From: Ginglymostoma cirratum
Lineage: Eukaryota
Reading direction: 5' to 3'
Assembly (NCBI GenBank): GCA_024137785.1
Contig: JAHRHZ010000002.1
Span: 4,927,258 to 4,991,257 of the forward strand
Length of the DNA stretch: 64,000 bases
Part shown: one piece after another, positions 1,913-64,000 of the stretch
Numbering within the stretch: the first letter of the stretch is position 1
How the letters are laid out: each line of letters starts with the position of its first letter
Made by a program: the position numbers and the translations under genes
The notes under the pieces: generated by a model
Seen by the model: the letters and a program-made list of their open reading frames with translations, nothing else
What the model was told of the DNA's origin: nothing
Database searches by the model: none

Positions 1913-1940
1913 CTGATGAAGGGTTTAGGCCCGAAACGTC
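1913..1940 (+). ncRNA. Minimal type I hammerhead ribozyme motif
   Basis: CTGATGA-A-GGGT TTAG GCCC-GAAA-CGTC: conserved core, stem II, palindromic ACGT stem III, GUC site. Confidence 0.75.
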
Positions 1941-2038
1941 AAGTTTTCCTGCTCCTATGATGCTGCTTGACCTGCTGTGTTCATCCAGCCCCATGCTTGT
2001 TATCTCGGATTCTCCAGCATCTGCAGTACCTTTTATCT
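1913..2038 (+). mobile_element. Short Penelope-like terminal unit (hammerhead + 3' tail) inserted into Gypsy pol
   Basis: Matches the 3' end of the PLE copies at 33371-33497 and 53165-53295. Flanked by 15-bp direct repeat CAGAAATGGAGACCT (1900-1914, 2039-2053). Confidence 0.9.
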
Positions 2039-4829
2039 CAGAAATGGAGACCTTGGCAGGTTAGTGCAAATGAGAAATGTGAGGAAGTTCACCAGGTTGT
2101 GTTGCCAGTAGAATACATACAGTAAATGTTGTGGTAGCACACAAATTACCTGTAGGAGGTCATCTAGCAGTAAGGGAAGACTCAGGCTAAGGTACAGAAA
2201 CATTTTATTGAACTGGATTACATAAAAATGTGGTTGAATTTTGCCATACCAGTCGTACATGTCAGATGGAAGGAAGGCCACAGGCAGTAATAAAACCAGC
2301 ATCTTTGATGCCAATTCCAGCATTTGAGGATCCTTTTACACAGGGTATAATTGACTGTGTAGATCCCCTCCCTAAAACCAAAAGTGGGAATCAGTATTTG
2401 CTAACCTTAATGGATGTGTCTGTCAGGTTTTTGGAGGCAATTCCATTAGAGAATGTTAGAGAAAAAAGGTTGTGGATGAATTGCTTGCTTTCTTCACCTG
2501 TTATGTACTACCCAGGGAGATTCAGTCAGACCAAGGGTCCAATTTTACTGCTAAATTATTTAAGGAAGTCACGGCTAGCTTAGGCATCAAACACTTTAAA
2601 TCAAATGCGTACCACCCTGAATCCCAGGGAGCATTGAAAAGAAGGCATCAGATCCTAAAGACAATGTTGAGAGCTTATTGCCAGGATTACCCAAATGATT
2701 GGCATAAAGGTATTTATATTATTTGCATTAGAGATGCTGTAAATGAGTCAGCACAGTTTACTCCATTTGACTTGATATTCAGACACAAAGTAAGAGGACC
2801 TTTAAAATTAATTAAGGAAAAGTTGATAGGTCCGAAGTCAGAGATCACACAGTTGGATTATGTACCTAATGTGACAGAAAAATTAACCGGAGTAGGTGAA
2901 TTAGCCAGACAACATTTGAAGGTAGTACAGCACCTAATGAAGAAAGAAGCGGATAAGAAATCTAAAATTTGTACATTTGCCAGTGGGGATAAGGTATTGG
3001 TGCCATTACCAGTAGTAGGAGATCCCTTCAAAGCAAGGTTTAATGGTCCCTATCAGATTGAGAAGAAATTAAGTCAGATGAATTATCTGGTAAAGATGCC
3101 AGATAGGAAAAAAATTATCGGGCATGTCATGCGAACATGTTGAAACCTTACTATGACAAGGAAAGGGAACCAGAGGAACATTGAGGAGTCAAATCCAGAT
3201 GATTTGGATTTTGATGTACCTCAGAATAACTTGAATAATGAGGAAGTCCTTAAGGAATGGGTTAGGGTAGTGAGTTATCTGTCAAAAAAAAGAGAACCGA
3301 ATTGAAAGACTTGTTACAGTGCTAGGAAGACCTATGTAGAAATTGAATGGGGAGGACTAATACCATAGTACATGAGGTTGTATGTAGGGAATGCTGTTCT
3401 GATAAAACAACAGCCCTACTGTCTTAATACTCTCAAAGCAGAGCAGGTTCAGAAGGAAATGGAAGCGATGCTCGAAGAAGACATCATAGAGACAAGTAAA
3501 AGTGAGTGACGTTTGCTGATCATATTGGTTCCCAAACCTGATGGTACTCAACGATTCTGCATAGATTATCAGAAGATCAACGCAGTAACCAAATCTGACT
3601 CATAACCAATTCCAAGGCTGGAGGATTGTGTAGAAAAAGTAGGACAAGCCACTTACATCACAAAGTTGGGCTTACTTTGCGATTACTGGCAAGTACCTTT
3701 GTTGGAGAGAGAAAAAGAAGTTTCTGCTTTTACAAGCCCAAATGGACAGTATAAATTTAAAGTAATGCCCTTTGGAATGAAAAAAATGCACCAGCCACTT
3801 TTCAAAGGCTTATAAACATAGTTGTTGGAGGATTAACTAATTGTGCTGTCTACATAGATAACTTAGTGATCTTTAGCCATTTGTGGAAAGATCACATGGA
3901 GCATTTGGCAAAGCTCTTTGAGAGACTACAAAGTCAAAGTTGGTCATAAACTTGGGAAATACAGAGTTTGCAAAGGCGGAAGTGACATGCTTAGAGAAAA
4001 ACATCAGATATGGACGGATGATGCTGAGGAACGTGAAGGTGAAGGCTATCGAGGAATTTCCAAGATCATCCGCGAACAAGGAAGTGCTACAATTTTTAGG
4101 ATTGAGCAGATTCTACAGGAAATTTGTACCAAACTTTAGTCCGTAGTAGCACAGTTGAAGGATTTGTTAAAAAAGAACATGAAATTTCGGTGGACAGAAC
4201 AATGCCAGGAGACATTTGAGAATTTAAAAGCAGTGTTAACAACCACACCAGTTTTAGCCACACCAAATTTTTTAAAACACTTCAAAGTCACCATTACAAA
4301 AGCGATGTAGGTGTTGAAACTGTGTTGTAACAGGAGGATAATTGTGGAACTGAAAGATCAATTGGTTATTTTTCAAAAAAACTCAATATCCACGGGGAAA
4401 AAAATTCAACCATTGAAAAAGTTATTGCGTTTGGTAATGGCCTTACAACATTTTAATGTTTATGTTGCAAACAATAGATCAGAGACAATTGTGTATATAG
4501 ATCACAATCCTTTGACATTTCTGGAAAGATTTAAGGACATGAATACCAGATATTTTAATTGGAGTCACATGTTACAAGCATTTTACAGATTGTACATGTT
4601 GCCAGTCATGAAAATACTACTGTGGCTGCTTTATCATGAGTTTAAAAGAAAAATGTTTATATAAAATAAAAACGGTAGTGTTCAATGTTGTATATATATA
4701 CAGAATTAGTATAAAATGCATAAGTCTAGGTTAATGAGCGATGGATTGAGTAATATAAGGGAGTTAAGGGTTTAAAAGAAAAAACCCATCTTTTCGTAAT
4801 GATGTTTCATTTTTTTCTTAAGGGGGGGG

Positions 4830-14914: not shown

Positions 14915-15122
14915 TAAAAACTGTAAGAACTGTGGATGCTGTAAATCAGGAACAAAAACAAAGTTGCTGGAAAAGCCCAGCAGGTCTGGCAGCATATGTG
15001 AAGGAAAAAACAGAGTTAACGTTTCAGGTCCGGTGACCCTTCCTCAGAACTGATGGTGGCTGGGAAAACGTCAGTTTATATGTATATAGATGTCCTACAT
15101 ATAAACTGATGTTTTCCCAGCC
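14915..15122 (-). mobile_element. Penelope-like terminal fragment (subfamily B) with fold-back end
   Basis: Same sequence as the PLE terminus at 61772-61945. 27-bp inverted repeat 15058-15084 / 15096-15122. Confidence 0.85.
15015..15050 (-). ncRNA. Minimal type I hammerhead ribozyme motif
   Basis: Minus strand GTT-CTGAGGA-A-GGGTC ACCG GACCT-GAAA-CGTT-AAC (stem I GTT/AAC, stem II with G.U pair). Confidence 0.75.
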
Positions 15123-21060: not shown

Positions 21061-21190
21061 GAGATAGTAGGAACTGCAGATGCTGGAGAATCTGAGATAA
21101 CAAGGTGTAGAGCTGGATGAACACAGCAGGCCAAGCAGCATCAGAGGAGCAGGAAGGCTGACATTTCAGGCCTAGACCCTTCTTCAGAAA
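21061..21190 (-). mobile_element. Short Penelope-like terminal unit with hammerhead variant (21160-21187)
   Basis: Minus strand TTT-CTGAAGA-A-GGGTCTAGGCCT-GAAATGTC followed by the PLE tail. Confidence 0.85.
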
Positions 21191-21419
21191 TCAGAAATTT
21201 CGCAAACTTTTTCTCTCTTAATCTTGGACTCATTATTTTTCCACACTGAACTGTTAAACAATACATGTAAAGATCAAATCTCCACAATCAAGGACTTGCA
21301 AAACTTGCTTTGAATTTTCATTTAATTAATGTTGATTTGATGGGAACTCAGTTTATAGATATTCATATACCCAAACAAGAACTTCAGACCTCAATGTCCC
21401 CCATATTCTACCAGGAACA

Positions 21420-23789: not shown

Positions 23790-26700
23790 AATGCTGGGCC
23801 AGACAACATGTTGTAACTGCATGATGTGGGAGCTGGTGGACTCCAGTGTGGTTCACAGTGACCACATCTGTAGCAATATATTGATTGCTTGAGGAAGTTT
23901 TGCTGAGAGTAGGTGGGGGAAAGAGTTACCTGGATGTTGTGTTTCAGGGGGCAGTCACACTCCTTAGATTAAATAGCTCTAATTTGGTCAGTGGTCAGGG
24001 AAAGGAGGCAGACAGAGGCATCCAAAAAGTACTGCTGAAGAGCTTCACCCTTGAGCTTATCTAACAGATTTGAGATTGTTGTTCCTTTTGTGGATGTGGG
24101 CTGTAGCAAACTAACCATAGCTCCCTGGTACAGGGAGCCATTCAAGAAGGGGAAGAAAACAGAAATGTATTCGTAATTGGAGACAGTATACTCAAGGGAA
24201 TAAATACTGATCTTTGCGGCCAGCATCAAGAGTCCCGGAGGCTGTGTTAACTGCTGCATGCTCAGTTTCAGGATATCTCAACTGGGCTGTAGGGGAACTT
24301 GGAGCGGGAGGGGAAAGATCCAGTTGTCATGGTCCACATGGGTACCAATGATATAAATAGCTTCAGGGAATATGAGCAGCTAGGGGCTAAATTAAAAGGC
24401 AGAATCAAAAAGGTGATAATGTATGGATTACTATCTGAACTACAAGAAAATTGTCACAGGCTGAATAAGATTACAGGTAAATGCTGTGGCTCAAAGATTG
24501 TTGTGGGACAAACAGCTTCGAATTCATGGGTCATTGGCATCAGAACTGGTGAAGGAGGGAGCTGTTCTGATAGGATGGGTTGCACTGAATCATGCTGGGA
24601 CCAGAGTCCTGGCAAATCACATAACTGGAACTGTGGTTTTCAATTAAATAGTGGAGGTGTGGGATCAGTTGTATGGAAAATTATGGGAAAATTTAAAGAG
24701 GGTGAGGGCCCAGTAGAGGCTATTAACATTTCCAGAATAAATAATAGTAGAGAGTGTACGGGAAGAGTCAGGAATCTAACTTCAGGCGCAGCAGGTAAGG
24801 GGACAACTAAAAGAACAGGGGCAGTCAACCAAGAACTGAAGGTATTGTACTTAAATGCACACAGTACACAAAACAAGGTCAATGAGCTTGGAGCGCAGAT
24901 TCGAAATTGGCAGGTGTAATGTTGTGGGTATCACAGAAGCATGGCTGAAAGGGGATCATGGCTGGGAACTAAACAACCAAGGATACATGTCCTGTCAAAA
25001 AGACAGGCAGATAGGCAGAAGGAGTGAGGTTGCCTTGTTCGTAAGAAATTAAATCGATAGCAAGAAGTGATACACAGTCGGAAGGTGTGGAATCTGTCTA
25101 GGTAGAGTTGATGAACTGCAAAGGAAAAAAGGAAAAGGAAAAATGGAAAAACTCCTGAAGGGATAACAAAGTGTGGAGCTGGAGGAACACAGCAGGCCAG
25201 GCAGCATCAAAGGAATAGGAACGCTGACGTTTTGGGTCGGGACCCTTCTTCAGAAAATCGTGATGTGAGTTGTTTTTGGGCTTCCTAGCAGCAGTGGAGA
25301 AGGAAAGCAATCAGGAAATAGAAAAGGCATATAAGAAAGGCCCTATTACAATAATGATGAGTGATTTCAACACAGATAGACTGGGAAAATCAGATTGGTA
25401 ATTGATCTCAAGAAAAGGAATTCATAGAATGTCTGTGAGATTTTTTTTGGAGCAGCTTGTGAACAGCCCACTAGGGAACAGGCAATTCTGGATTTAGTGA
25501 TGTGTCATTAGGCAGACTTGATTAGGGAGCTGAAGGCGAAGGAAACCCTGGGGGACTGTGGCCATAATATGATAGAGTTCACCTTGTTGTTTGAGAGAGA
25601 GAAGCTGGAATCAGATGTAAAAGTATCACAAATGAGTAAAGACATGAGGGAGGAGCTGGTCAGAGTTGATTGGAAGAGGAATCCGGCAGGAAAGGTGGTG
25701 GAGCAGCAATGGCAGGAGTTTCTGTGGGTAATGTGGGAGGCCCAGCAGAAGTTCGTCCAAAGGATGAAGAAACATACTAGGAGGAGGCTGACAAGGGAAG
25801 TCAAGGACAGCATAAAAGCAAAATATAAAGTATACGATGTGGTGAATGTGGGTGGGAAGCTAGAGGGTTGGGAAGCCTTTAAAATCGGCAGAGAATAACC
25901 GAAAATGCGATAAGTGGGAGAAGATGACATATGAGAGTAAGCTAGCCAAAAATATAAAAGAAGATTGCACGAGCTTTTTTATATATTCAAAAGGTAAGAC
26001 ATAAGCAAGAGTGGACTTTGGACTGCTGGAAAATGAGGCTGGAGAAGTAGTAATGGTGAACAAAGAAATGATGGAGGAACCAAATAGCTATCTTACATCA
26101 GTTTTCACAGCGGAAGACACCTGCAGCATTCCAGAACTTTAAAAGAGTCGGGGGGCGGAGGTAAGGATAGTGGAAATCACTAAGGAGAAGGCGTGGGGGG
26201 GAAGGTGAAAGGTCTGAAGGTGGATAAATCACCCAGACCAGATGGACTACACCCCAGAGTTCTGAAGAAGTTAGCTGAGGAAATTGTAGAGGAATCACTG
26301 GAGTCAGAGAGGATCCCAGAGGACTGTAAAATTGCTAATATAACACCCCTGTTTAAGAAGGGAAGGAGGCAGAAGACTGGAAACTGTAGGCTGGTCAGCT
26401 TGACATTAGTCGTTAGTAAGATTTTAGAGTCTATTGTTAAGAATGAGTACCTGGAAGTACATGGTAAAATAGGGCACACTTTATCAAGGGGAGGTCATGC
26501 CTGACGAATCTGTCAAAATTCTTTGAGGAGGTAACGAGTGAGTTAAATAACACAGAGCCAGCAGACGTGATCTATTTGGATTTTCAGAAGGCCTTCGACA
26601 AGGTGCTGTACAGGAAGCCACTAATTCAGATAAGAGTCCATGGTGTTAGGGAAAAGGTACTGGCATGGATTGAGGATTGGCTGAATGGCAGAAAGCAGGA

Positions 26701-27769: not shown

Positions 27770-28200
27770 AAAATTCATTCAAGGGACATAGACTTTGCTG
27801 GCTGGGCCACCATTTATTTGCTCATTCTGAAGTACTCTTGAGAAGTTGCTGGTGAGCTGTCCTCTTGAAATGCTGTAGTCTTCTGCACACTTCCTACGCA
27901 CTGCAGACTGTAGGAACACTCAGTGTTGATAGGAAGACAGTTCCAGGATTTTGAGTTAGCACCAGTGAAGGAATGAAGAAGGGTCTAGGCCCGAAACATC
28001 GACTCTCCTAATCCTCTGATGCTGCCTGACCAGCTGGTTTCCTCCAGCTCCACACTGTATCGACAAGCTGTGATGATATATTTCCAAGTCAGGATGGTGC
28101 CTTACTTAGAAGGGAACTTGCAGCTGTTGTTCCCATGTATCTGCCCTTGTCCTTCTGAATGGTAGACATCACAGGTTTGGAAGGCACTGTCGGAGAAGCA
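27770..28200 (-). mobile_element. 3' end of CR1/L2-group LINE, interrupted by a plus-strand Penelope terminal unit (27974-28064)
   Basis: Same family as 42480-43145. Insert TGAAGAAGGGTCTAGGCCCGAAACATC... Confidence 0.65.
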
Positions 28201-30480: not shown

Positions 30481-32764
30481 TATCCAAGTATGAAGGAGCC
30501 GTTTTAATACAAAAACTACTTTTTTGTTATTCATTAACAGGTTGTAGAAATTATTGGCTAGGAGAGCATTTATTGCCCTTCTCTAACTGAATGTGGAGGT
30601 GCCGGTGTTGAACAGGGGTGGACAAGGTCAAAAATCACACAACACCATGTTATAGTCCAGCAGGTTTAATTGAAGACACAAACTTTCAGAATCACGCTCC
30701 TTCTTCAGGTGTCAGTGAGAGAGGTGCCATCAGACACAGAATTTATTAACAAAAGATCAAAGGGTCATCGAACTGATGTGAATGTGTTGAACAAACCTAA
30801 GGTGACTGTTAAATCTTTAATCAGTTAGAAGGGATTAATATGCAAATTCCAGAATTTCTTTTCAACTCACTGCCCCTCTGGAGGTTGTTGCTCTGGGCTT
30901 GACATGAATGCTCAAGCCGTCAGCGAATATGTAAATACCAGATTCTTCAGCTGCACTCACAAGGTAGCTCAAAACATCACCCAAGCACAATGCAATGCCA
31001 TCCATGCTCTCAAGATCAATTGCAACATTGTCATCAAACCAGCAGACAAAGGAGGAGTCATCGTCATACAGAATAGAATGGACTACTGCAAGGAACTATA
31101 TAGGCAACTGAACAACCAGGAAGACGACAACTACCTGCCGATCCGACCAAAGAACTCAACAGATTGATCAAGACCTTTGATCCAGTCCTTCGGAGTTTCC
31201 TACACGCTCTCATCCTGTGTACTTCTACTGCCTTCTGAGGATACAAAGTCAACACACCTTGAGGTCCTATCGTATCAGGCAATGGGACTCTGTGTGAGAA
31301 CCTCCCTGGCTATATCGAGGGCATCTTGAAACCCATTGTTGAGGGAACCCCCAGCTTTTGTCGCAACACCACAGGTTTCTGACACAAACTCAGCAACCAC
31401 TGGCCAATTGAACCAGGAACATTCCTCGTCACAATGGACATTTCGGTACTCTACACCAGCATCCCCCAAAACAACAGCATCGCTGCAACAGCCTCAGTAC
31501 TCAGTACCAGCAAATATCAATTTCTAGACACCATCCTCAACTCATCTGCTTCATACTTGACCACAATGTCTTCACATTCGACAATCAGTTCTTCATTCAG
31601 ACACACAAAACAGCCATGAAATCCAGATTCGCACCCCAATATGCCAACATTTCATGCACAAGTTCAAACAAGACTTCATTGCTGCCCAGGATCTCCGACC
31701 AACGCTGTACACCAGGTACATTGATGACATTTTCTTCCTTTGGACTCATGGCAAGGAATGACTGAAACAATTACATAATGATATCAACAAGTTTCATCCC
31801 ACCATCAGACTTACCGTGGACTACTCTTTAGAATCAGTCTTATTCTTGGACACATGCATCTCTATCAATGATGAACACCACAATACCTCACTCTATGCCA
31901 AGACTTTGGATAACATTGCGATGCTGCACCTGTCTAGCTTCCACCCTAACACATTAGAAAAGCCATCCCCTGCAGACAAGCCCCACGCATACACAGGATC
32001 TGTTCAGATGAGGAGGAGTGAGACAGAGACCTGAAGGGTGCCCTCACAAGAATGGGATATGATGCTCAACTTATTGATCACTAGTTCTGACAGTGAAAAA
32101 TCATGATGACCACCACAGAAGACAGACACGAAGATATGACTGATTGGGTACCCTTCATTGTCCAGTACTTCCCGGGAGTGGAGAAACCACACCAAGTTCT
32201 TCACCGCCTTCAACACATCATCAATGACGATGTGCACCTCACCAAGATCTTTTCTGCGGCTCCAGTTCTCGCCGTCAAACAATGGCCAAGCCTTAAACAG
32301 ACCACTGTTCGCAGCAAACAACCCAGCCTTCAGGACAACATCGACCACAACACCATACAACCCTATCATGGCAACCTCTGCAAGACATGTCAGATTTTTG
32401 ACATGGATACTACTATCATACGTGGGAACACCACCCACCATGTGCATGGCAGATACCCATATGTCTCGGCCAATGTTGTCTACCTCACATGTTGCAGGCA
32501 AGGATGTCCTGAGGCAAGGCGTATCAGTGAAATCATGCAGACGCTACTAAAACAGATGAATGGACACCGCGCAACAATTGCTAGACAGGAATGTTCCCTC
32601 CCAGTGGGGAAACACTTCCGGGGTCAAGGAGATTCGGCCTTGGACCTTCAGGATACACAACAATGCAGTGTCACCAAGTAGAGGCTGATAGCCCATGAGG
32701 ATGGCTTCAATTGGGATATTGGGTTCATGTCACACTACAGGTGACCCCATCACACTATAGATTC

Positions 32765-32898
32765 TCACATACACACACTCTCTCACACAAACGCACTCAC
32801 ACACTCACACAGACCCTCTCTCATACACACACACCCTCTCTCTCACACACAAAGACACACTCTGTCTCTCTCCCACACATACACACACACACACACAC
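32765..32898. repeat. (CA)n/(CT)n low-complexity tract
   Basis: Direct observation. Confidence 0.9.
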
Positions 32899-33142
32899 GT
32901 AAATTTATGGGGTGAATTTGCACTTGCAGATTTGTAATTACAGATACATTCTATTTTGTTCAAAAAGCACACAATTTGTACACAATGTGGCATTTTATAA
33001 ATTCCTACTTTGGAAATAAAACCAGGCTGACTCCAAATTAATAAACAGCCAGATTCTAAACAAGGCCTCACACCTAAAATAACAAGGTGTGGGGCTGGAT
33101 GAATGCAGCAGGCCAAGCAGCATCATAGGAGCAGGAAAGCTT

Positions 33143-33170
33143 GACGTTTCGGGCCCAGACCCTTCATCAG
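33143..33170 (-). ncRNA. Minimal type I hammerhead ribozyme motif
   Basis: CTGATGA-A-GGGTCTGGGCCC-GAAA-CGTC on the minus strand. Confidence 0.75.
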
Positions 33171-33370
33171 AAATGGGGGAGGGAAAGAGGGTTCTGAAAT
33201 AAATATGGAGAGAGGGGGAGGCTGATAGAAGATGGATAGAGGAGAGGATAGGTGGAGAGGAGGCAGACAAGTCAAAGAGGCGGGGGTGGAGCCAGTAAAG
33301 GTGAGTGTAGGTGGGGGGGTAGGGAGGAGATAGGTCAGTCCAGGGAGGACGGACAGGTCAAAGGGCATTT

Positions 33371-33398
33371 CTGATGAAGGGTCTAGGCCCGAAACGTC
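33371..33398 (+). ncRNA. Minimal type I hammerhead ribozyme motif
   Basis: TTT-CTGATGA-A-GGGTCTAGGCCC-GAAA-CGTC-AAG. Confidence 0.75.
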
Positions 33399-33839
33399 AA
33401 GCTTTCCTGCTCCTATGATGCTGCTTGGCCTGCTGTGTTCATCCAGCCCCACACCTTGTTATCTCGGATTCTCCAGCATCTGCAGTACCTTTTATCTCTC
33501 ACACCTAAAATGCATTGTCTGACCTGGGATGTCACCTCTGGCGTACTGAGGGAAGTGATAAAACCTTTAGTTATCTCGGGGCAGTGACTTGAAAGAAATT
33601 CTGGAGTTTGCTTATCAATCCTTTCTAACTGATTATTGATTTAACAGCCACCTTAGGTTTGTTCAACTCATTTGCATTAGTTCTATGACCCTTTGATCTT
33701 CTGCTTATAAATTCTGTGTCTGATGGCACCTCTCTCACTGACACCTGAAGAAGGAGTGGAACTCTGAAGGCTTGTGTCTTCAAATAAACCTGTTGGACCT
33801 GTTGGTGTTGTGTGATTTTTGACCTTGTCCCTAAGTGAA

Positions 33840-47080: not shown

Positions 47081-47229
47081 AGATTAGAATTTGGATAATG
47101 AAATGCTTATGGTATAAGATACGCAATGTTCTGTATACTTCAATATTTCACTTAGAGTTTTTAACTGAGGTGAGGCTGTCCTTGTGTCGTTTAAACAAAG
47201 TGATCATAAAACCTGTATTCAGTCTCCCA

Positions 47230-47320
47230 GAAACAACACAGTATGGAGCTGGAGGAACACAGCAGGTCAGGCAGCATCAGAGAAGCAGGATGTTTCGGGT
47301 CAGGACTCTTCTTCTGAAAT
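47230..47320 (-). mobile_element. Decayed short Penelope-like terminal unit
   Basis: GGAGCTGGAGGAACACAGCAGGTCAGGCAGCATC...GTTTCGGGTCAGGACTCTTCTTC. Confidence 0.7.
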
Positions 47321-48014
47321 GAAGATAAAATAGAACCAATCAAACTATGTATGTGGAACACTAACTTAAAGATTTAGAAACACATGGTGAGATAAAAGCC
47401 CATTAATCCCAAAACTACTCTTTTACAGTCCTCATGATAAAGAGAATCTCCTGCTCTATTACTTCTATAGAATTAAATTAACTGTGACTTCAACTCCCAG
47501 TCTGGAGAATCTGACCACCTCTTCCTGGAACCCTCGTACACCTGAGCTTAAGCTTTCTTAGCTTCAAGCAGTCTCTTCAGAGTTCTAATCAAACAGTCCT
47601 GATCTTGAACTATTACTAATTCCTTATACTAAGGGAACCTATTAACAAGTGTAAACCATCTTTGTACTTTGTCAGGAGCAACTAATTTGGACATCTACCT
47701 TCAGCCAAGGCTTCTGCAGAACACCGCCACCCCCCCAGCTAATTAAAACGTTTTTATTTCGTACTGTGTGTGTTTCCCCTAAGTTCAAAGAAACAAGTCT
47801 AGAATTTTCAATCAGGAAACCTGGGTACTTTATTTTCTCATTAACTCTCAATGTCAACAATAACCCATAGCACTTGGATGGTTATCTCTCTCAAACATTT
47901 AAAATAAATTACTGTGGCTGCAAAAATATTTTTGAGTTGATCTTTAAAATCCCTTAAACAAACAGAATCCATATGCTACTAGCTCAAGATTCAAAAATCC
48001 AAACTTAAAAATAA

Positions 48015-50557: not shown

Positions 50558-50787
50558 AAAAGCAGAAGTTGTTGGAAAAGTGCAGCAGGTCTGGCAGCAT
50601 CTGTGAAGAAAAAGTCAGAGTTAACGTTTCGGGTCTGGTGACCCTTCCTCAGAACTGGACTGGACCAGAAACGTTAACTCTGACTTTTTTTTCTTCACAG
50701 ATGCTGTCAGATCTGCTGAGCTTTTCCAGCAACTTCTGTTTTTGTTCCTAATTTACAGCATCCACAGTTCTTTCGGTTTTTATTTAG
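50558..50787. mobile_element. Inverted Penelope-like terminal insertion (subfamily B) in MHC intron 4
   Basis: Arms ~50558-50636 and ~50660-50745 are reverse complements. 13-bp TSD GACTTCACTGAAT (50545-50557, 50788-50800). Confidence 0.9.
50620..50655 (-). ncRNA. Minimal type I hammerhead ribozyme motif (sense to MHC gene)
   Basis: GTT-CTGAGGA-A-GGGTC ACCA GACCC-GAAA-CGTT-AAC. Confidence 0.75.
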
Positions 50788-50879: not shown

Positions 50880-50886
50880 TCACACG

Positions 50887-50918: not shown

Positions 50919-50934
50919 GTAGCCAGCTCCTTAC

Positions 50935-53111: not shown

Positions 53112-53157
53112 TCTGGAAATCCACTATCCCTATTCTAATCAGGCACTGGGAATAATA

Positions 53158-56100
53158 CTGTATCAGAGAGAAAAAGTACTGCAGATGCTGGAGAATCCGA
53201 GATAACAAGGTGTAGAGCTGGATGAACACAGCAGGCCAAGCAGCATCATAGGAGCAGGAAAGCTTGACATTTGGGCCTAGACCTTTCATCAGAAATGGGG
53301 GAGGGGAAGAGGGTTCTGAAATAAATAGGGAGAGAGGGGGAGGTGGGGAGAGGATGGATAGAGGAGAGGATAGGTAGAGAGGAGGCAGACAAGTCGAAGA
53401 GGCAGGGATGGAGCCAGTAAAGGTGAGTGTAGGTGGGGGCGAAGGGAGGAGATAGGTCAGTCCAGGGAGGACGGACAGGTCAAGGGGGCGGGATGAGGTC
53501 AGTAGACAGGAGATGGGGGTGGGGCTTGAGGTGGGAGGACGGGACAGGTGAGAGGAAGAACAGGTTAGGGAGGCGGAGATGAGCTGGGCTGGTTTTGGGA
53601 TGCGGTTGGGGGAGGGGAGATTTTGAAGCTTGTGAAATCCACATTGATACCATTGGGCTGCAGGGTTCCCAAGCTGAATATGATTTGCTGTTCCTGCAGC
53701 CTTCGGGTGGCATCACTGTGGCATTGCAGGAGGCCCAGGATGGACATGTCGTCTGAGGAATGGGAGGGGGAGTTGAAATGGTTCGCGACTGGGAGGTGCA
53801 GTTGTTTGTTGCGAACTGAGCGCAGGTGTTCTGCAAAGCGGTCCCCAAGCCTCCGCTTGGTTTCCCCGATGTAGAGGAAGCCACAACGGGTACAGCGGAT
53901 GCAGTATACCACATTGGCAGATGTGCAGGTGAACATCTGCCTGATGTGGAAAGTCTTCTTGGCGCCTGGGATTGGGGTGAGGGAGGAGGTGTGAGGGCAG
54001 GTGTAGCACTTCCTGCGGTTGCAGGGAAAAGTGCCGGGTGTGGTGGGGCTGGAGGGGAGTGTGGATCGGACAAGGGAGTCGTGGAGGGAGTGGTCCCTCC
54101 GGAAAGCAGATAAGGGTGGGGAGAGAAAAATGTCTTTGGTGGTGGGGTCAGATTGCAGATGGCGGAAGTGTCGGAGGATGATGGGTTGGATCCGGAGGTT
54201 GGTGGTGTGGTACGTGAGGACGAGGGGGATTCTTTTTTGGTTATTATTGCGGGGACGGGGTGTGAGGGTTGAGTTACGGGAAATGCGGGAGACATGGTCG
54301 AGGCCGTTCTCGACCACTGTTGGGGGGAAGTTGCGGTCCTTGAAGAATGAGGACATCTGAGATGTACGGGAGTGGAATGTCTCATCCTGGGAGCAGATGC
54401 GGCGGAGGTGAAGGAATTGGGAATAGGGGATGGCATTTTTGCAGGAAGGTTTGGTTGGAGGAGGTGTATTCCAGGTAGTTGTGGGAGTCAGTGGGCTTGA
54501 AATGGATATCGGTTTCTAGGTGGTTACCCGAGATGGAGACAAAGAGGTCCAGGAAGGAGAGAGAAGTGTTGGAGATGGTCCAGGTGAACTTCAGGTTGGG
54601 GTGGAAGGTGTTGGTGAAGTGAATGAACTGTTCGAGCTCCTCGTGGGAGCACGAGGCGGTGCCGATACAGTCATCAATGTAACAGAGGAAGAGGTGGGGT
54701 TTAGGGCCAGTGTATGTACGGAAGAGGGATTGTTCCACGTAACCTACAAAGAGGCAGACATAGCTTGGGCCCATGCGGGTACCCATGGCCACCCACTTTG
54801 TCTGTAGGAAGTGGGAGGAATTGAAAGAGAAGTTGTTGAGGGTGAGGAGGAGTTCGGCTAAGCGGATGAGGGTGTCAGTGGAGGGGGATTGGTCAGGTCT
54901 GCGGGACAGGAAGAAGCGGAGGGCCTTTAGGCCATCTGTATGCGGAATACACTGGCCCTAAACCCCACCACTTCCTCCGTTACATTGATGACTGTATTGG
55001 CGCCGCCTCGTGCTCCCACGAGGAGCTTGAACAGCTCATCCACTCCACTAACACCTTCCACCCCAACCTTAAGTTCACCTGGACCATCTCTAACACCTCG
55101 CTCTCCTTCCTGTACCTCTCTGTCTCCATCTCGGGTAATCACCTAGAAACCGATATCCATTTCAAGCCCACTGACTCCCACAGCTACCGAGAATACACCT
55201 CCTCCCACCCATCTTCCTGCAAAAATGCCATCCCCTATTCCCAATTCCTTCGCCTCCACTGCATCTGCTCCCAGGATGAGGCATTCCACTCCCGTACATC
55301 TCAGATGTCCTCATTCTTCAAAGACCGCAACTTCACCCCAACACTGGTCGAGAACGCCCTCGACCGTGTCTCCCGCATTTCCCGTAACTCAACCCTCACA
55401 CCCCGTCCCCGCAATAATAACCAAAAAAGAATCCCCCTCGTCCTCACATACCACACCACCAACCTCCGGATCCAACGCATCATCCTCTGACACTTCCGCC
55501 ATCTGCAATAAGACCCCATCACCAAAGACATTTTTCTCTCCCCACCCTTATCTGTTTTCCGGAGGGACCACTCCCTCCACGACTCCCTTGTCCGCTCCAC
55601 ACTCACCTCCAGCCCCACCACACCCGGCACTTTTCCCTGCAACCGCAGGAAGTGCTACACCTGCCCCCACACCTCCTCCCTCACCCCAATCCCAGGCCCC
55701 AAGAAGACTTTCCACATCAGGCAGATGTTCACCTGCACATCTGCCAATGTGGTATACTGCATCCGCTGTACCCATTGTGGCTTCCTCTGCATCGGGGAAA
55801 CCAAGCGGAGGCTTGGGGACCGCTTTGCAGAACACCTGCGCTCAGTTCGCAACAAACAACTGCACCTCCCAGTCACGAACCATTTCAACTCCCCCTCCCA
55901 TTCCTCAGACGACATGTCCATCCTGGGCCTCCTGCAATGCCACAGTGATGCCACCCGAAGGCTGCAGGAACAGCAAATCATATTCAGCTTGGGAACCCTG
56001 CAGCCCAATGGTATCAATGTGGATTTCACAAGCTTCAAAATCTCCCCTCCCCCAACCGCATCCCAAAACCAGCCCAGCTCATTTCCACCTCCCTAACCTG

Positions 56101-56463
56101 TCCTTCCTCTCACCTGTCCCCTCCTCCCACCTCAAGCCCCACCCCCATCTTCCGTCTACTGACCTCATCCCGCCCCCTTGACCTGTCCGTCCTCCCTGGA
56201 CTGACCTATCTCCTCCCTATCCCCCCGACCTACACTCACCTTTACTGGCTCCATCCCCGCCTCTTCGACTTGTCTGCCTCCCCTCCACATATCCTCTCCT
56301 CTATCCATCCTCTTTCTACCTCCCCCTCTCTCCCTATTTATTTCAGAACCCTCTTCCCATCCTCCATTTCTGATGAAGGGTCTGGGCCCGAAACATCAAG
56401 CTTTCCTGCTCCTATGATGCTGCTTGGCCTGCTGTGTTCATCCAGCCCCACACCTTGTTATCT
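53158..56463. mobile_element. Young Penelope-like element (subfamily A; RT C-terminus + GIY-YIG) inserted as a large inverted duplication
   Basis: Minus arm 53165-54946 (AMGTRMGPSY, YIDD, NVVYCIRC..CGFLYIGETKRRL) and plus arm 54947-56463. 12-bp TSD CTGGGAATAATA (53146-53157, 56462-56473). Hammerhead variants at ~53266-53292 (-, GAAA damaged) and 56370-56397 (+, ACGT>ACAT). Confidence 0.95.
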
Positions 56464-56889
56464 GGGAATAATATGCTTTGAGGGGGAACAAATTGTTGTT
56501 TGTAAACTGGAAAAAAAACAAAAACATATCCCTGGAGACTTGATTTTACTAAAACTCGGATGAACTGTTGTTTGTACATAAAACTAGAATGAAACAAAGA
56601 AGTTTACCAAGACTTTGATTCACTGTTAAAACTTGATCTTTGATCATCTCCTGACAGCAGAACCAGCGGGTGAATGATTGGTTAATTTTAGTCAAATAAC
56701 CAATTAAAAGATAAATGATTGATTGTCACCAGTTACTGGGAGGAAGAAGTTCAGGGATTTATTATCAGGCAGAGAAATAATTGTGACTCACCTTTGTGTG
56801 GCACACTTGTTTGATGATAGTCTCAGTACTTCCTGAGGTTTTATGAAACAAAGTATGGTAATGTGCTATATAAGGAAATGTTGGACAAG

Positions 56890-57123
56890 ACAAAAACCAA
56901 AAGAACTGCGGATGCTGGAAATCAGAAACAGTAACAGAAATTCTTAGAAAATCTCAGCAGGTCTGGCAGCATCCATGGAGAATTAATGTTTTGGGTCCAG
57001 TGACAGTGACAGTGACTTCAGCATTTTGAAGAAGAGTCACTGGATCTGAAATGTTAATTCTAATTTCTCTCCACTGATGCTACCAGACCTGCTGAGTTTT
57101 TCCAACAATTTCTGTTTTTGTTC
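56890..57123. mobile_element. Older inverted Penelope-like terminal insertion
   Basis: Arms 56925-57004 and 57036-57122 are imperfect reverse complements. Decayed hammerhead TTGAAGAAGAGTCACTGGATCTGAAATGTT. Confidence 0.8.
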
Positions 57124-57239
57124 AGGAACTATTGGGTCAGACAAACAAACATTTTCCCTGAGACTTGTGTGCACCAAGCAGCAAAGGTTGTGCAACACTG
57201 TAGAGATGGAATTGTAGAGCTCAGGGCCCAAGTAGCTGA

Positions 57240-60733: not shown

Positions 60734-61771
60734 CTGTATGGTGGGGCAAAAATCCCCGTCAGTTTACGGACAGACCCTGGACTTAAATCCCTCCAAAGGC
60801 AGAAGTTGTGGAAATTACATTGGATTACAGTCACTGGGATTCCAGAAACCGTGGACTGCAACTGAGCCAGGAAGAGGCTGGCTAGGATAGACTGGGGAAT
60901 ATATAAGCCCAGGGACATATGTCTGGGACAGGGGTTAGCTAACAGAAACTGAAGGAAGATCACCCCACCGCCACCACATTCATGCCTCAGCTAAAATAAT
61001 GCTAGCCAGTCTGCAGGAAACAAACAACTTCAACAATTTAAGACCCTTCGGAGCCTACACAGGTATAAAACAATTCAATTCCAAATTAGTGCTCAGGCAC
61101 AAAGTTACTGAACATTCCACACGATTGTACTGCATGCAAACCTGTTTCACCTTGGATGTTAAAAAAAAAATTCACACCACTGTGCAGACCGAACAGATAC
61201 CCATCCAAGGGAAATGCTGGACATTCCAAAACCATCAAAGCCATTCACTTCAATCGAAAAATGATTCTCACCTACTTCAGTGCCCAGGAATCCCTTTCAG
61301 CTCCGAGAGGAGAAACAACAGCTCCACAGATTTGGCTGGGGATTAGTGGGGCAGGGGGAGCTGGTGCGGTGGGGTGCTGCAGTTGGGTATAACTGGAGAT
61401 CCTGAGCCCCAGCACAGGAGTGAGGGAAAGAGAAGCAAGTGATGAAAAGAGAAGCAAGTACAGGCAAGAGAAGTGAGGGAAAGAGAGTGAGTGTACTGAG
61501 AATCCTGCACTGTGAGTGGGGCACTGCGAGACCAGCACTGTGATACCAACCACTGAACACCAGCAACTAACTGCGAACCTCCACTTGATGCCTCGAGGCG
61601 ACCGAAGGCATTCTGAGGTGCGAAACACTAACTGGGGCAACACCAGCAACATTCACCACCATCAGCAACAGCAACCCACTCGCAAGGACCACCAGGAGGA
61701 GGAAGAAAACCAGGATACTCACCAGGCCGGTCCCACAAGTCCAACTGCACAGACAGTCTCCACTAGCCTGA

Positions 61772-64000
61772 CTAAAAACCAAAAGGACTGTGGATGCTGT
61801 AAATCAGGAACAAAAACAAAGATGCTGGAAAAGCTCAGCAGCTCTGGCAGCACCTGTGAAGGAAAAAACAGATTTAACGTTTCGGGTCTGGCGACCCTTC
61901 CTCAGAACTGATAGTGGCTGGGAAAGCGTCAGTTTATTTGCAGAAAATAGGGAGGTGGGTGGGGTAGGGAGTACGTGATAGGATAGAGCCCAAAGAGAGA
62001 GAAAGACAGTTGAACAGATAAAGGAGTTGCTAAGGATCAGGCTGGGAGGGTGAGTAGTTGTTAATGGCGACTGTTAGTGACTAACAACAGAGGGTGAGTA
62101 AAGGCAGGCTAAATGGTAACAAGGCCTGGTGTGTTGGGTGGGGGGCTGGGACATGGTAGAGTTTCGGCCGTAAAATTATTGAACTCAATGCCCCGGAGGG
62201 CTGTAGGGTCCCCAAGCGGAAAATGAGGTGTTGTTCCTCCAGCTTGCGTTGGGCTTCGCTGGAACACTGCAGAAAGCCAGAGACAGACATGTTGGCCAGG
62301 GAGCAGGGTGGTGTGTCAAAGTGGCAGGAAACATGTAGCTCAGGGTCTTTTTTGTGAGCAGAACATAGATGTTCTGCGAAGTGGTCGTCAAGTCTACGCT
62401 TCGTTTCCCCAATGTAGAGGAGACCACATTGTGAGCAGCAAATGCAGTAGACCAGATTCTGGGAAGTGCAGGTGAAGTGTTGCTTCACCTGGAAGGCATG
62501 TTTGGGCCCTTGGATGCTGGGGAGGGAGGAGGTAAATGGGCAGGTGTTGCACCTTCGCCGGTTACAGGGGAAGGTGCCGTAGGGCTGTGGGGAGGTGTTG
62601 GGGGTGAAGGAAGTGTGGACCAGGGTGTCCTGGAGGGAACGGTCCCTGCGGAAGGCGGACAAGGGAGGGGAGGGGAATATGTGTCTGGTGGTGGCATCTT
62701 GCTGGAAGTGGCGGAAATGGCATCTGATGATCTTCTGGATGTGTATGCTGGTGGGATGGTAGGTAAGGATAAGGGGAACCCTATTGTTGTTGTGGGAGGG
62801 AAGAGAATGGGTGAGGGCAGAAGTGTGGGAGATGGGTCGGACCTGGTTGAGGGCCCTGTCGACAATGGAGCTGGGGAAACCTTCGTTGAGGAAGAAGGTG
62901 GACATTTTGGAGGCTCCCTTGTCGAAGTTGGCCTCATTTGAACATATGCGACGGAGATGGATGAACTGAGAGAATGGGATGGAGTCTTTGCAGGAAGTGG
63001 GGTGTGAGGATGTATAATCCAGACAGCTGTGGGAGTCAGAGGGTTTGTCGTGGATATTGGTGGCCAGTCTAACCCCAGAAATGGAAACAGAAATGTCGAG
63101 GAAGGGAAGGGAGGAGTCAGAGATAAGCCAGGTGAACGTAATAGAAGTGTGGAAATTGGAGGCGAAATTGATGAAGTTTACCAATTCCAGACGAGAAAAG
63201 GAAGCAGCATCGACGATATCATCGATGTATCGGAGAAAGAATTGTGGGTGGGGGCTGGAATAAGACTGGAATAAGGAATGTTCCATGTACCCCATGAAGA
63301 GACAGGCATAATTGTGGGTACCATGGCAACCCCTCTTACTTGAAGAAAATGAGAGGAGTTGAAAGAGAAGTTGTTGAGGGTGAGGACAAGCTCGGCCAAG
63401 TGGAGGACGGTGGTGGTGGGTGTAGATGGTTCAGGTCTTTGCTCCAGGAAGAAGCCCTGAGACCCTCATGGTGGGGAATGGACGTGTAAAGGGATTGCAC
63501 GTCCATGGTAAAGAGGAGGTGGCTGGAACCGGTAAACTGGAAGTTTTGAAACCGACGTAAGGCGTCAGAAGAATCATGGATATACGTAGGCAGGGATTGG
63601 GCCAGCGGGCAGAAGACTGAGTCAAGGTAGAAAGAAATGAGTTCTGTGGGGCACGAACAGGCTGAAACAATGGGTCTGCCCAGACAGTCCTGTTTGTGGA
63701 TTTTCGGCAGGAGGTAGAAACGAGGGGTTGAGGGACTGTTAGCTTGAAAACGGAGTTGGGGAGATCACTGGATGAAATGAGATCAGCTACAGTGGTGGAT
63801 ACAATGGCCTGATGTGTCATGGTGAGGTCATGGTCCAGGGGAAGGTTGGAGGAGGTATCTGAGAGTTGGCACTCAGCCTCTGCAAGGTAGAGGTCAGTAC
63901 GCCAGACTACAACATCACCACCCTTATTGGCAGGCTTAATGACAAAGTCAGGGCTAGATCTGAGTGCACTGAGTGCAGTCCGTTCGGAGGGAGATAGGTT
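61772..64000 (-). mobile_element. Penelope-like element (subfamily B), RT + GIY-YIG, 5' part outside window
   Basis: ORF 62081-63295: RYIDD, LPFLDISVS, CNRRRCNTC, NLVYCICCSQCGLLYIGETKRRL. Upstream IKPANKGG motif ~63940-63915. 3' terminus shared with 14915-15084 and 50558-50787. Confidence 0.93.
61874..61908 (-). ncRNA. Minimal type I hammerhead ribozyme motif
   Basis: GTT-CTGAGGA-A-GGGTC GCCA GACCC-GAAA-CGTT-AA on the element's coding strand, ~100 nt before its 3' end. Confidence 0.75.

What the first reader, a model, noticed from the sequence alone, without database searches (positions are those of the whole stretch)
1913..61908. A dispersed family of minimal hammerhead ribozymes carried by three Penelope subfamilies
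Seen: CUGANGA-A-[stem II]-GAAA-CGUH with intact cores at 1913-1940(+), 15015-15050(-), 33143-33170(-), 33371-33398(+), 50620-50655(-) and 61874-61908(-). Decayed copies at 21160, 25226, 27974, 47290, 53266, 56370 and 57026; a third type (CAC-CTGAAGA-A-GGAG..(C/T)TCT-GAA..-GTG) at 30677-30711 and 33742-33776. Stem II differs between subfamilies but keeps pairing, stem I covaries (TTT/AAG, GTT/AAC, CAC/GTG), and stem III is reduced to a palindrome (ACGT). Established: Penelope-like elements encode minimal type I hammerheads thought to cleave as dimers, and an extra A after A9 is tolerated. Inference: this genome is seeded with potential self- or trans-cleaving RNA motifs, about one per 4-5 kb here, none visible in the ORF track.
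Basis: partly seen in the sequence, partly recalled or inferred. Interest (0 to 1): 0.8.

Follow-up and report, generated by a model that had tools for sequence, protein, structure and literature searches.

The report
Penelope retrotransposon tails with hammerhead relics
The repeated motif is real: it is the minimal hammerhead ribozyme that Penelope-like retrotransposons are already known to carry, seen here in three shark families, and most copies are short, decayed insertion debris, not working ribozymes.

Summary
They are copies of three repeat families (A, B, C), not chance matches. [quoted passage not shown] The insertions show the published PLE hallmarks: 5' truncation, head-to-head inverted arms, an optional 30-36 nt tail and 10-13 bp target-site duplications.

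Covariation inside the window is weak. Eighty related PLE loci from metagenomes supply the comparison: 27 of 49 usable loci carry the same motif on the ORF strand about 105-275 nt (mostly 106-165) past the nuclease domain, with compensatory changes in stems I and II.

Only three copies meet every rule (33143-33170, 33371-33398, 50620-50655). Six of 13 A/B copies read ATGT or ACAT in place of the ACGT stem III palindrome. No two intact copies lie in tandem. Rfam's hammerhead models do not detect any copy.

This is a known kind (Cervera & De la Peña 2014), and this scan has flagged it repeatedly in this genome.

One side observation: half of the insertion arms begin within 7 nt of the ribozyme's 5' edge, about 30 nt after a TATA-like box.

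The parts
1913..2039 (+). Family A mini-insertion (127 nt). The hammerhead core lies at 1913-1940, the 5' strand of stem I is absent, and the tail is the long form. It is flanked by the 12-bp duplication AGAAATGGAGAC at 1901-1912 and 2040-2051.
21061..21191 (-). Family A mini-insertion with a decayed motif at 21160-21187. It reads ATGT where intact copies read ACGT, and has G.U at 10.1/11.1. About 27 nt of inverted tail-like filler lie at its 5' side.
25162..25256 (-). Family A mini-insertion with a short tail. The motif at 25226-25253 reads AAAA where GAAA is expected.
27974..28055 (+). Family A mini-insertion. It starts inside or at the CTGA box and reads ACAT where intact copies read ACGT.
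33081..33498 (.). Family A head-to-head fold-back made in one event, with the 13-bp duplication TCACACCTAAAAT at 33068-33080 and 33499-33511. The minus arm runs to 33365 with an intact hammerhead at 33143-33170. The plus arm is 33366-33498 with an intact hammerhead at 33371-33398. The whole insertion is nested in the 3' region of the family C element.
47225..47324 (-). Family A mini-insertion, heavily decayed. It reads CAGA where CTGA is expected and ACAT where ACGT is expected, and has a deletion after the cleavage site.
53158..56463 (.). Family A large fold-back with two 1.5-kb inverted arms (53196-54715 minus, 54947-56467 plus) that are 95.3% alike. Each arm carries PLE ORF relics (YIDD, GIY-YIG) and ends in a decayed motif, at 53266-53292(-) and 56370-56397(+). 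The duplication GGGAATAATA lies at 53148 and 56464.
14915..15122 (-). Family B insertion with its hammerhead at 15015-15050 (G.U at 10.1/11.1) and a long tail. Its 5' end forms a hairpin at 15058-15122, which Rfam scores weakly as a microRNA precursor.
50558..50787 (.). Family B head-to-head fold-back. The minus arm (50554-50657) has an intact hammerhead at 50620-50655 and a short tail. The plus arm (50663-50788) starts inside stem II and has the long tail. The 13-bp duplication GACTTCACTGAAT lies at 50545 and 50788.
56892..57123 (.). Family B head-to-head fold-back, decayed. The minus arm is 56892-56971 and the plus arm is 57024-57123. The motif relic near 57026-57060 reads TTGA where CTGA is expected and ATGT where ACGT is expected.
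61760..64000 (-). Family B Penelope-like element that runs off the window. ORF relics lie at 62081-63295 (404 aa: YIDD, a CX4CX2C linker, GIY-YIG) and upstream RT pieces reach 64000. The hammerhead is at 61874-61908, 173-176 nt after the stop codon, and the tail runs to about 61760.
30620..33830 (+). Family C Penelope-like element. It has an inverted 5'-truncated arm at 30620-30876(-) with a hammerhead-like motif at 30677-30711, a decayed ORF at 30847-32675(+), and a 3' end at 33578-33830(+) with a motif at 33742-33776. Both motifs depart from the rules.

Best explanation
The motifs are copies of the minimal type I hammerhead that sits in the pseudo-LTR of Penelope-like retrotransposons. Three families (A, B, C) of an elasmobranch genome carry it here.

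Inferred layout of the master elements: a TATA-like box, then about 30 nt, then the hammerhead, then 16-22 nt, then the ORF start codon. Reverse transcription starts 50-90 nt into that ORF. Every insertion therefore ends in a 'hammerhead plus first ~30 codons' tail, with or without a 30-36 nt extension.

The ribozyme has no helix III of its own. Its ACGU palindrome can pair only with a second copy, giving a domain-swapped dimer. Cleavage after GUC or GUU would therefore happen only on RNAs that hold two units, or with help from the element's protein. That cleavage would free a unit-length RNA just upstream of the start codon.

Shown here: identity of the carriers, insertion anatomy, conservation and covariation of the motif across PLE families, and its fixed position.
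Inferred: the promoter and start-codon layout.
Taken from the literature: cleavage itself and its dependence on a dimer or protein.

The copies in this window are by-products of integration. They are truncated, often folded back, and decaying neutrally, and are not expected to act.
For: 1. Motif copies at all listed sites, far above chance.
2. PLE ORF relics beside each family.
   - The 404-aa ORF has 101 homologues, the best from sharks and rays, several with RVT_1 plus GIY-YIG.
   - It aligns to residues 271-630 of such a protein. The family A GIY-YIG piece aligns likewise. The family C ORF was found by tblastn.
3. PLE insertion hallmarks as described in PMC8557442.
   - Inverted 5'-truncated arms, with the tail present on one arm only.
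   - 3' ends at about +97/+103 or +133 from the CTGA box.
   - Target-site duplications.
4. In 80 related PLE loci, a motif-only descriptor and a covariance model give 32 matches on the ORF strand.
   - 27 of 49 loci with enough downstream sequence have one about 105-275 nt (mostly 106-165) after the nuclease domain.
   - All have the bulged A, G10.1-C11.1, ACGU and H17.
5. Covariation across families.
   - 90% of cells are paired against 67% in shuffles, 7 of 8 pairs change on both sides, and 0 of 500 shuffles reach the score. The result is the same on 38 distinct sequences.
   - Stem I pairing was not a search criterion.
6. In a motif-blind count over 29 unalignable tail families, hammerhead words (CGAAACG, GAAGGGT, CTGAGGA, GAAACGT, CTGATGA) are among the most over-represented shared 7-mers.
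7. A full-length relative (L011) has the hammerhead 23 nt upstream of the ATG of a 1011-codon frame. Shark tails keep an ATG 16-22 nt after the cleavage site, open to the end of the tail.
8. Literature.
   - The min-HHR rules and the dimer model are in PMC4209133.
   - The Anolis PLE hammerhead cleaves, with C3/G8 rescue, only with its protein, and reverse transcription starts inside the ORF (PMC11167929).
Against: - No cleavage was or could be shown here. Only assembled contigs of sequencing runs were available, so no RNA ends could be seen.
- Rfam's hammerhead models give no hit, even at E <= 10 on 301 nt.
- Nearest-neighbour folding disfavours the active dimer. For family A it is -3.5 kcal/mol against an MFE of -37.2, because the near-palindromic stem II prefers a 12-bp intermolecular duplex. 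For family B it is -17.5 against -28.5.
- Helices are at the short end of the published range (stem I 3-4 bp, stem II 4-5 bp).
- A sub-lineage with C in place of U4 is multi-copy in the metagenome loci.
- Published work shows that hammerhead mutants still insert in vitro (PMC11167929), and that hammerhead-less Naiad PLEs thrive (PMC8557442). The ribozyme is therefore not essential for transposition.
- No insertion arm begins at the cleavage site.
Confidence: 0.85

Rival explanations
1. The conserved 30-nt block is not a working ribozyme. It would instead be a protein-binding or promoter-proximal RNA/DNA element of the pseudo-LTR, for example an anchor for the PLE ribonucleoprotein or part of the 5' leader. 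Its likeness to a hammerhead would then be ancestral baggage.
For: - The predicted stability of the active fold is low.
- Published in-vitro activity of min-HHRs is low, and cleavage is dispensable for insertion.
- A core-mutant (C4) lineage is still multi-copy.
- Arm 5' ends pile up at the block's edge, and a TATA-like box lies 30-39 nt upstream.
Against: - The invariant positions across families with 30-45% protein identity are exactly the catalytic nucleotides, plus G10.1-C11.1 and the palindrome. Both stems covary.
- The Anolis PLE motif does cleave, with C3/G8 compensatory rescue.
Confidence: 0.1
2. The 100-140 nt units are not debris of autonomous elements. They would be a self-standing non-autonomous family (retrozyme- or SINE-like) with its own master copies, mobilised in trans by PLE proteins.
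For: - The 5' ends are uniform, within 7 nt of the motif in 7 of 14 arms.
- Tails have far higher word depth than the ORF in sequencing runs.
- A 2026 preprint links vertebrate non-LTR retrozymes to PLE pseudo-LTRs.
Against: - There is no head-to-tail array in the window.
- The short units are 90-97% identical to the tails of the ORF-bearing copies.
- Many short units are one arm of a fold-back made in a single event with its own target-site duplication.
- Excess of tails is what 5' truncation alone predicts.
Confidence: 0.12
3. The matches are chance occurrences of a loose pattern in AT-poor repeats and have no common origin with hammerheads.
For: - Rfam models do not score them.
- In-window covariation is not significant.
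Against: - Shuffles give 0.01 expected against 3 observed for the full pattern.
- The same architecture sits at a fixed distance from the ORF in independent PLE families, with compensatory changes.
Confidence: 0.01

Closest known systems
Minimal hammerhead ribozymes (min-HHR) of metazoan Penelope-like elements (Cervera & De la Peña 2014, PMC4209133)
   Same: - CUGANGA and GAAA boxes, one unpaired base between A9 and 10.1, and a G10.1-C11.1 pair.
- No loop 3, with a palindromic 15.x/16.x.
- Location in the pseudo-LTR.
- Mostly solitary copies, plus pairs on opposite strands 100-700 bp apart.
- Many consensus families per genome.
   Different: - The helices are shorter than the families drawn there (stem II 4-5 bp against 6-8, stem I 3-4 bp against 4-5).
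- The host is an elasmobranch, which that paper does not list.
- Family A's stem II is itself nearly palindromic.
Poseidon PLE of Anolis carolinensis (PAc; PMC11167929)
   Same: - The hammerhead lies at the ORF start inside the pseudo-LTR.
- Insertions end 50-120 nt into the ORF at two alternative sites, which gives the optional 30-40 nt tail.
- Both target strands are used, which fits the head-to-head arms.
   Different: - In PAc the start codon lies inside the motif, with the cut site 26 nt downstream of the ATG. Here the ATG follows the cut site by 16-22 nt.
- The shark proteins have the CX4CX2C linker of the Neptune/Nematis type rather than Poseidon. Clade assignment was not resolved here.
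Non-LTR retrozymes of animals (Cervera & De la Peña 2020, PMC7229834; 2026 preprint 10.64898/2026.07.22.740005)
   Same: A type I hammerhead with a weak helix III on short non-coding units related to PLE pseudo-LTRs.
   Different: Retrozymes are head-to-tail arrays that give circular RNAs. The window has no array, only solitary or inverted units with their own target-site duplications.
Rfam Hammerhead_1 (type I) and related Rfam hammerhead families
   Same: The same catalytic core and helix order.
   Different: There is no helix III, no loop-loop contacts and an extra base after A9. The Rfam models give no match at any threshold tried.

Membership tests
PLE minimal hammerhead (min-HHR, PMC4209133) | CUGANGA box, stem II hairpin and GAAA box in type I order | tested here: met
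   All 13 A/B copies show the layout. The boxes are letter-perfect in 8 of them.
PLE minimal hammerhead (min-HHR, PMC4209133) | One unpaired nucleotide between A9 and 10.1 | tested here: met
   An A is present in every window copy and in every related family from the metagenome loci.
PLE minimal hammerhead (min-HHR, PMC4209133) | G10.1-C11.1 closing pair of stem II | tested here: met
   G-C is seen in 37 of 37 distinct related sequences and in the intact A/B copies. It is G.U in 15015-50, 21160-87 and both type C copies.
PLE minimal hammerhead (min-HHR, PMC4209133) | Palindromic 15.x/16.x with no loop 3, so that helix III forms only between two copies | tested here: met
   ACGT is present in 7 of 13 A/B copies. 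The other six read ATGT or ACAT at the CpG. It is not met in the type C copies, which read AGTT and GGCT.
PLE minimal hammerhead (min-HHR, PMC4209133) | Stems I and II supported by compensatory changes between families | tested here: met
   Not significant inside the window. Strong once related PLE families are added (0 of 500 shuffles reach the score).
PLE minimal hammerhead (min-HHR, PMC4209133) | Lies in the terminal repeat of an element that encodes RT plus GIY-YIG | tested here: met
   In family B the motif is about 175 nt past the stop codon, and in A and B about 290-300 nt past the last conserved nuclease residue. In 27 of 49 related loci it is about 105-275 nt (mostly 106-165) past that residue.
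PLE minimal hammerhead (min-HHR, PMC4209133) | Self-cleavage after H17 as a dimer | not testable with these tools
   Only contigs of public runs were available. Folding energies disfavour the active dimer, most of all in family A.
Rfam hammerhead families (Hammerhead_1, _3, _II, HH9, HH10) | Covariance-model score at or above the gathering threshold | tested here: not met
   No hammerhead family is listed at the gathering threshold or at E <= 10 on the whole window, nor on 301 nt around two intact copies.
Penelope-like elements with C-terminal endonuclease | One ORF with an RT (YxDD) followed by a GIY-YIG nuclease | tested here: met
   - YIDD is visible in the ORFs.
- GIY-YIG matches lie below Pfam's cut-off (17.4 and 20.8 bits).
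- The ORFs align at 34-38% to the matching part of P0079, which passes both Pfam cut-offs.
- The RT part of family B runs to the window end.
Penelope-like elements with C-terminal endonuclease | Insertion anatomy: 5' truncation, adjacent inverted truncated copy, optional 30-40 nt tail on one side | tested here: met
   Five head-to-head structures are present. The 3' ends fall at two sites 30-36 nt apart, and in both family B fold-backs one arm has the tail and the other lacks it. The anatomy is as described in PMC8557442.
Neptune/Nematis clades of PLEs | [quoted passage not shown] | tested here: inconclusive
   CX4CX2C is present in the family B ORF and invariant in the 13-protein alignment (C244, C249, C252). 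No phylogeny with named clade references was made.
Non-LTR retrozymes | Head-to-tail tandem array of hammerhead-bearing units | tested here: not met
   The self-comparison shows no same-strand adjacent units. All paired units are inverted.

The most novel reading that the evidence does not exclude
The pseudo-LTR promoter of these shark PLEs may fire at the 5' edge of the hammerhead, so the element's own RNA begins with the ribozyme.

The very abundant 100-140 nt 'hammerhead plus tail' insertions would then be run-off cDNAs. They would arise when reverse transcriptase enters at the initiation site nearest the RNA's 5' end.

The dimer-only ribozyme would serve to tell read-through or tandem transcripts (two motifs, cleaved) from unit-length ones (one motif, spared).

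Support in this window:
- 7 of 14 arm 5' ends fall within -5 to +1 of the CTGA box.
- None starts at the cleavage site.
- All three families, and one invertebrate family, have a TATA-like box 33-41 nt upstream.
Probability: 0.3. Interest if true: 0.5.

Novelty: new member of a known kind. Interest (0 to 1): 0.25.

Why it matters
This confirms that cartilaginous fishes carry the same ribozyme-bearing Penelope-like elements as bony fishes, amphibians and reptiles. It also shows that a sequence-only reader can spot them where Rfam models fail. That is useful for annotation: the hairpin at 15058-15122 would otherwise pass as a microRNA-like locus.

It does not change what is known about hammerheads. 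The only part that could add to the field is the layout inferred here: a TATA-like box, arm 5' ends at the ribozyme edge, and the start codon 16-22 nt after the cut site. This gives a testable account of why tiny 'hammerhead plus tail' insertions dominate, and of what a dimer-only ribozyme at the very 5' end of the transcript might be for.

Tried and rejected
- **Rfam scans.** Run at gathering and E-value thresholds, on the whole window and on 301 nt. No hammerhead family was found. This is a limit of the models, not evidence against the motif.
- **RNA evidence.** The run finder offered only assembled contigs, most of them of guessed RNA type. Laying four runs showed that the family is hugely repeated, with tails deeper than the ORF and other copies reading the intact ACGT. 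It gave no ends, no strand and no proof of transcription.
- **The look-up of encoding contigs.** Metagenome loci were used instead.
- **Single-strand and two-strand folding.** The minimum-energy folds are not the hammerhead. This is uninformative for a motif that depends on tertiary contacts or protein.
- **Type C as a SINE with a tRNA-like head.** Rejected. Its shared 5' end is the truncation point of an inverted arm of a third PLE.
- **Ribozyme-cleaved RNA as the template of the mini-insertions.** Rejected. No arm begins at the cleavage site.
- **A 5'-junction hot spot in the invertebrate 'GCT' family.** Not seen. Most inverted arms there extend well past the motif.
- **The weak model hit at 41963-42016.** Read and dismissed, because it has no stem II.
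Full report

Reading the listed sites on the stated strands shows the motif at every one. In families A and B it reads CTGANGA, an extra A, a GC-rich hairpin, GAAA, CGT, then C or T.

- The pattern CTGANGA-N13-GAAACGT occurs 3 times against 0.01 expected from shuffles.
- The looser CTGANGA-N8-30-GAAAC occurs 8 times against 1.46.
- The family A word from stem II to the cleavage site occurs 6 times with up to 3 mismatches against 0.
- A covariance model built from 11 copies, run without filters, finds 13 A/B copies at E <= 4e-5 and one partial inverted arm. It finds the two 'third type' sites only weakly, at 15.1 and 8.6 bits.
- A broader model finds nothing more. One marginal hit at 41963-42016 has no stem II.

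The excess over chance comes from repeat copies.

**2. What carries the motifs?**

*Family B.* The copy at 61874-61908 lies 173-176 nt after the stop of a 404-aa ORF (62081-63295, minus strand). That ORF shows YIDD, a CX4CX2C linker and a GIY-YIG-type block.
- Pfam gives only a sub-threshold GIY-YIG match.
- The word search returns 101 homologues. The best are from sharks and rays, and several combine RVT_1 and GIY-YIG.
- The ORF aligns at 34% to residues 271-630 of one such protein, which passes both Pfam cut-offs.

*Family A.* This family has a 3.3-kb structure at 53158-56463, made of two 1.5-kb inverted arms that are 95.3% alike.
- Each arm has YIDD and GIY-YIG pieces and ends in a motif copy.
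- Its protein pieces are 91-94% identical to an annotated whale shark protein. The genome is therefore an elasmobranch, probably an orectolobiform shark.

*Family C.* tblastn finds a third, older PLE ORF at 30847-32675 (plus strand).
- The 258-nt type C unit at 30620-30876 (minus) abuts its 5' end in inverted orientation.
- The unit at 33578-33830 (plus) is its 3' end.
Its common 5' end is a truncation point, not a SINE head.

**3. Insertion anatomy**

Alignments of all copies with their flanks and exact searches for the duplications show separate insertion events:

| Insertion | Target-site duplication |
|---|---|
| 1913-2039 | 12 bp |
| 33081-33498 (two abutting inverted arms) | 13 bp |
| 53158-56463 | 10 bp |
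| 50558-50787 | 13 bp |

- The 3' ends fall at about +97/+103 or +133 from the CTGA box in family A, and at two sites 36 nt apart in family B.
- In both family B fold-backs one arm has the extension and the other lacks it.
- These traits are the published hallmarks of PLE insertions (PMC8557442): 5' truncation, an adjacent inverted truncated copy, and a 30-40 nt tail on one side only.
- They also fit the two internal reverse-transcription start sites shown for the Anolis element (PMC11167929).

**4. Is it a hammerhead?**

*Inside the window the comparative signal is thin.* Stem II differs between A and B only by U.G versus U-A and by the loop. Stem I has one compensated pair. 60 of 500 shuffles reach the covariation score. 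No Rfam hammerhead model scores the sites, even at E <= 10 on 301 nt.

I therefore fetched 80 metagenome loci that encode relatives of the ORF at 28-48% identity.

*The motif recurs at a fixed position.*
- A descriptor of my own asked only for the two boxes, a stem II of at least 4 bp, any palindrome and H17. It gave 16 hits on the ORF strand and 4 on the other.
- A covariance model built from 13 sequences of distinct families gave 32 hits on the ORF strand and 10 on the other.
- 27 of 49 loci with enough downstream sequence have a match about 105-275 nt (mostly 106-165) after the last conserved nuclease residue.
- Most opposite-strand hits lie upstream of the ORF, as inverted arms do.

*Conserved features and covariation.*
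- Every family has the extra A, G10.1-C11.1, ACGU and C or U at position 17.
- Stem I reads UUU/AAG, GUU/AAC, CUA/UAG, ACA/UGU, GCU/AGC, UUC/GAA or CUCA/UGAG in different families.
- Stem II reads GGGU/GCCC, GGGUC/GACCC, GGGC/GCCC, GAGAC/GUCUC, GGUG/CACC or GGGC/GCUC.
- On the 13-sequence alignment 90% of cells pair against 67% in shuffles, 7 of 8 pairs change on both sides, and no shuffle reaches the score. The same holds on 38 distinct matches.
- Stem II pairing was part of my descriptor, so it is partly circular. Stem I pairing, the extra A, the identity of the palindrome and the position relative to the ORF were not.

*A motif-blind check agrees.* I counted shared 7-mers over one representative of each of 29 unalignable tail families. 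CGAAACG, GAAGGGT, CTGAGGA, GAAACGT and CTGATGA rank among the most over-represented.

These are the features that Cervera and De la Peña list as emerging beyond their search descriptor (PMC4209133). Membership in that class is therefore met on every feature that can be tested in silico.

**5. State of the copies here**

- By the strict rules, three copies are intact: 33143-70, 33371-98 and 50620-55.
- 1913-40 lacks the 5' strand of stem I because the insertion starts at the box.
- 61874-908 keeps 2 bp of stem I.
- 15015-50 has G.U at 10.1/11.1.
- Six of 13 A/B copies read ATGT or ACAT where intact copies read ACGT. Others have changes at C3, U4, G10.1 or G12. All six losses of the palindrome are CpG transitions, the signature of neutral decay of methylated DNA.
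- Type C copies have G.U at 10.1/11.1 and read AGTT and GGCT at stem III. One has GAAG in place of GAAA, so neither is intact.
- The two intact family A motifs are on opposite strands of one fold-back. One transcript would hold one motif and its antisense, not two ribozymes. No two intact same-strand copies are adjacent.

**6. How it most likely works**

*Helix III.* The motif has no helix III of its own. ACGU of one copy can pair only with ACGU of another. This also swaps stem I between the two RNAs, so each active site is built from both strands (topology worked out).

*Folding energies.* Nearest-neighbour energies do not favour this dimer.
- Family A: -3.5 kcal/mol against an MFE of -37.2, which uses the near-palindromic stem II as a 12-bp duplex.
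- Family B: -17.5 against -28.5, and the MFE looks much like the active fold.

This agrees with the low in-vitro activity of min-HHRs and with the protein-assisted cleavage of the Anolis motif.

*Position relative to the ORF.*
- In the full-length relative L011 the motif lies 23 nt upstream of the ATG that opens a 1011-codon frame.
- In shark families A and B an ATG follows the cleavage site by 16-22 nt. Its frame stays open to the end of the tail, with similar peptides in A and B.
- The tail is therefore probably the first ~30 codons of the ORF, and the ribozyme sits just upstream of the start codon.
- Cleavage of a read-through or tandem transcript would release a unit-length RNA with a short leader. 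This is the role proposed in PMC4209133.
- It is an inference. The literature also shows that cleavage is not needed for insertion in vitro, and that PLE clades without hammerheads prosper.
- Here, a lineage with C in place of U4 is multi-copy.

**7. A pattern beyond the finding**

- Seven of 14 insertion arms begin within -5 to +1 of the CTGA box: 1913, 21191, 25256, 27974, 33366, 50657 and 57024.
- With a generous null of 100-200 possible positions, this has a probability of 2e-5 to 2e-7.
- No arm begins at the cleavage site, so cleaved RNA was not their template.
- All three shark families have a TATA-like box 33-39 nt upstream of the box. One invertebrate family has a conserved CATATAAAC at about -38. 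The chance of such a box in a 9-nt window is about 1.5% per family.
- A start of transcription 3-9 nt before the motif would explain the clustered 5' ends as run-off at the RNA's 5' end, after reverse transcription enters at the site nearest that end.
- In Drosophila virilis the Penelope transcript also starts in the pseudo-LTR shortly upstream of the motif, though from a TATA-less promoter (PMC2377424; PMC4209133).
- The hot spot was not seen in the inverted arms of the invertebrate family.
- Another reader of this scan noted the same clustering elsewhere in this genome.
- I give this reading about 0.3.

**8. RNA evidence**

Only Logan contigs were on offer, most of guessed type.
- Laid on 53100-57200, they show tens of thousands of contigs in organism A.
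- Tails are several-fold deeper than the ORF.
- Other copies read the intact GACGTTTCGGG word.
- A few ORF contigs appear in a poly(A) RNA library of another organism.
- None of this shows ends or transcription.

**9. Verdict**

The thing is a known kind, described in 2014 for many animals. This scan has already found it several times on other stretches of this genome. It is of low interest apart from the 5'-end layout.

Noticed in passing
window 50792-51634 (-), with 50545-50800: A 280-aa ORF has MHC class I alpha-2 and C1-set (alpha-3) domains. The family B fold-back inserted exactly at its stop codon: the 13-bp target-site duplication at 50788-50800 contains the TGA. The insertion lies just 3' of the ORF, in a UTR or intron.
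   Followed up: partly
window 15058-15122: A near-perfect hairpin scores 36-38 bits against the mir-3688 and mir-2831 models, below their thresholds. It is the folded-back 5' end of a family B Penelope insertion, not a microRNA gene.
   Followed up: yes
seven arm starts: 1913, 21191, 25256, 27974, 33366, 50657, 57024: The 5' ends of 7 of 14 Penelope insertion arms fall within 7 nt of the hammerhead's 5' edge, and none falls at the cleavage site. A TATA-like box lies 33-39 nt upstream of the motif in all three shark families.
   Followed up: partly
L014, L030, L038, L049, L075 (metagenome PLE loci): A sub-lineage of an invertebrate PLE family has CCGACGA in place of CUGACGA, a change at the conserved U4. 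It is still present in several loci, which hints that an intact core is not needed for spread.
   Followed up: no
L027:1998-2030 (-): A canonical type I hammerhead lies next to a PLE ORF in a metagenome contig. It has a real helix III (an 8-nt palindrome) and 6 bp of stem I, and resembles the Schistosoma or retrozyme type.
   Followed up: no
window 17559-18590 (-): A 343-aa ORF made of about 11 C2H2 zinc fingers, probably an exon of a zinc-finger gene.
   Followed up: no
window 48295-48365 (-): A tRNA-like sequence scores 30 bits, just above Rfam's threshold of 29, with several unpaired acceptor-stem positions. It is probably a pseudogene or a SINE head.
   Followed up: no
window 2472-3143 (+) and 26567-26953 (+): Other retroelement relics are present: an integrase (rve / p58 C-terminal) fragment, and an RVT_1 fragment that does not match PLE proteins in tblastn.
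   Followed up: no
window 33399-33498, 14915-15017 and the other tails: The tails of families A and B keep an ATG 16-22 nt after the cleavage site, and the frame stays open to the end of the tail. The peptides are alike in A and B. This is probably the start of the element's ORF, as in the full-length relative L011 (ATG at 374).
   Followed up: partly
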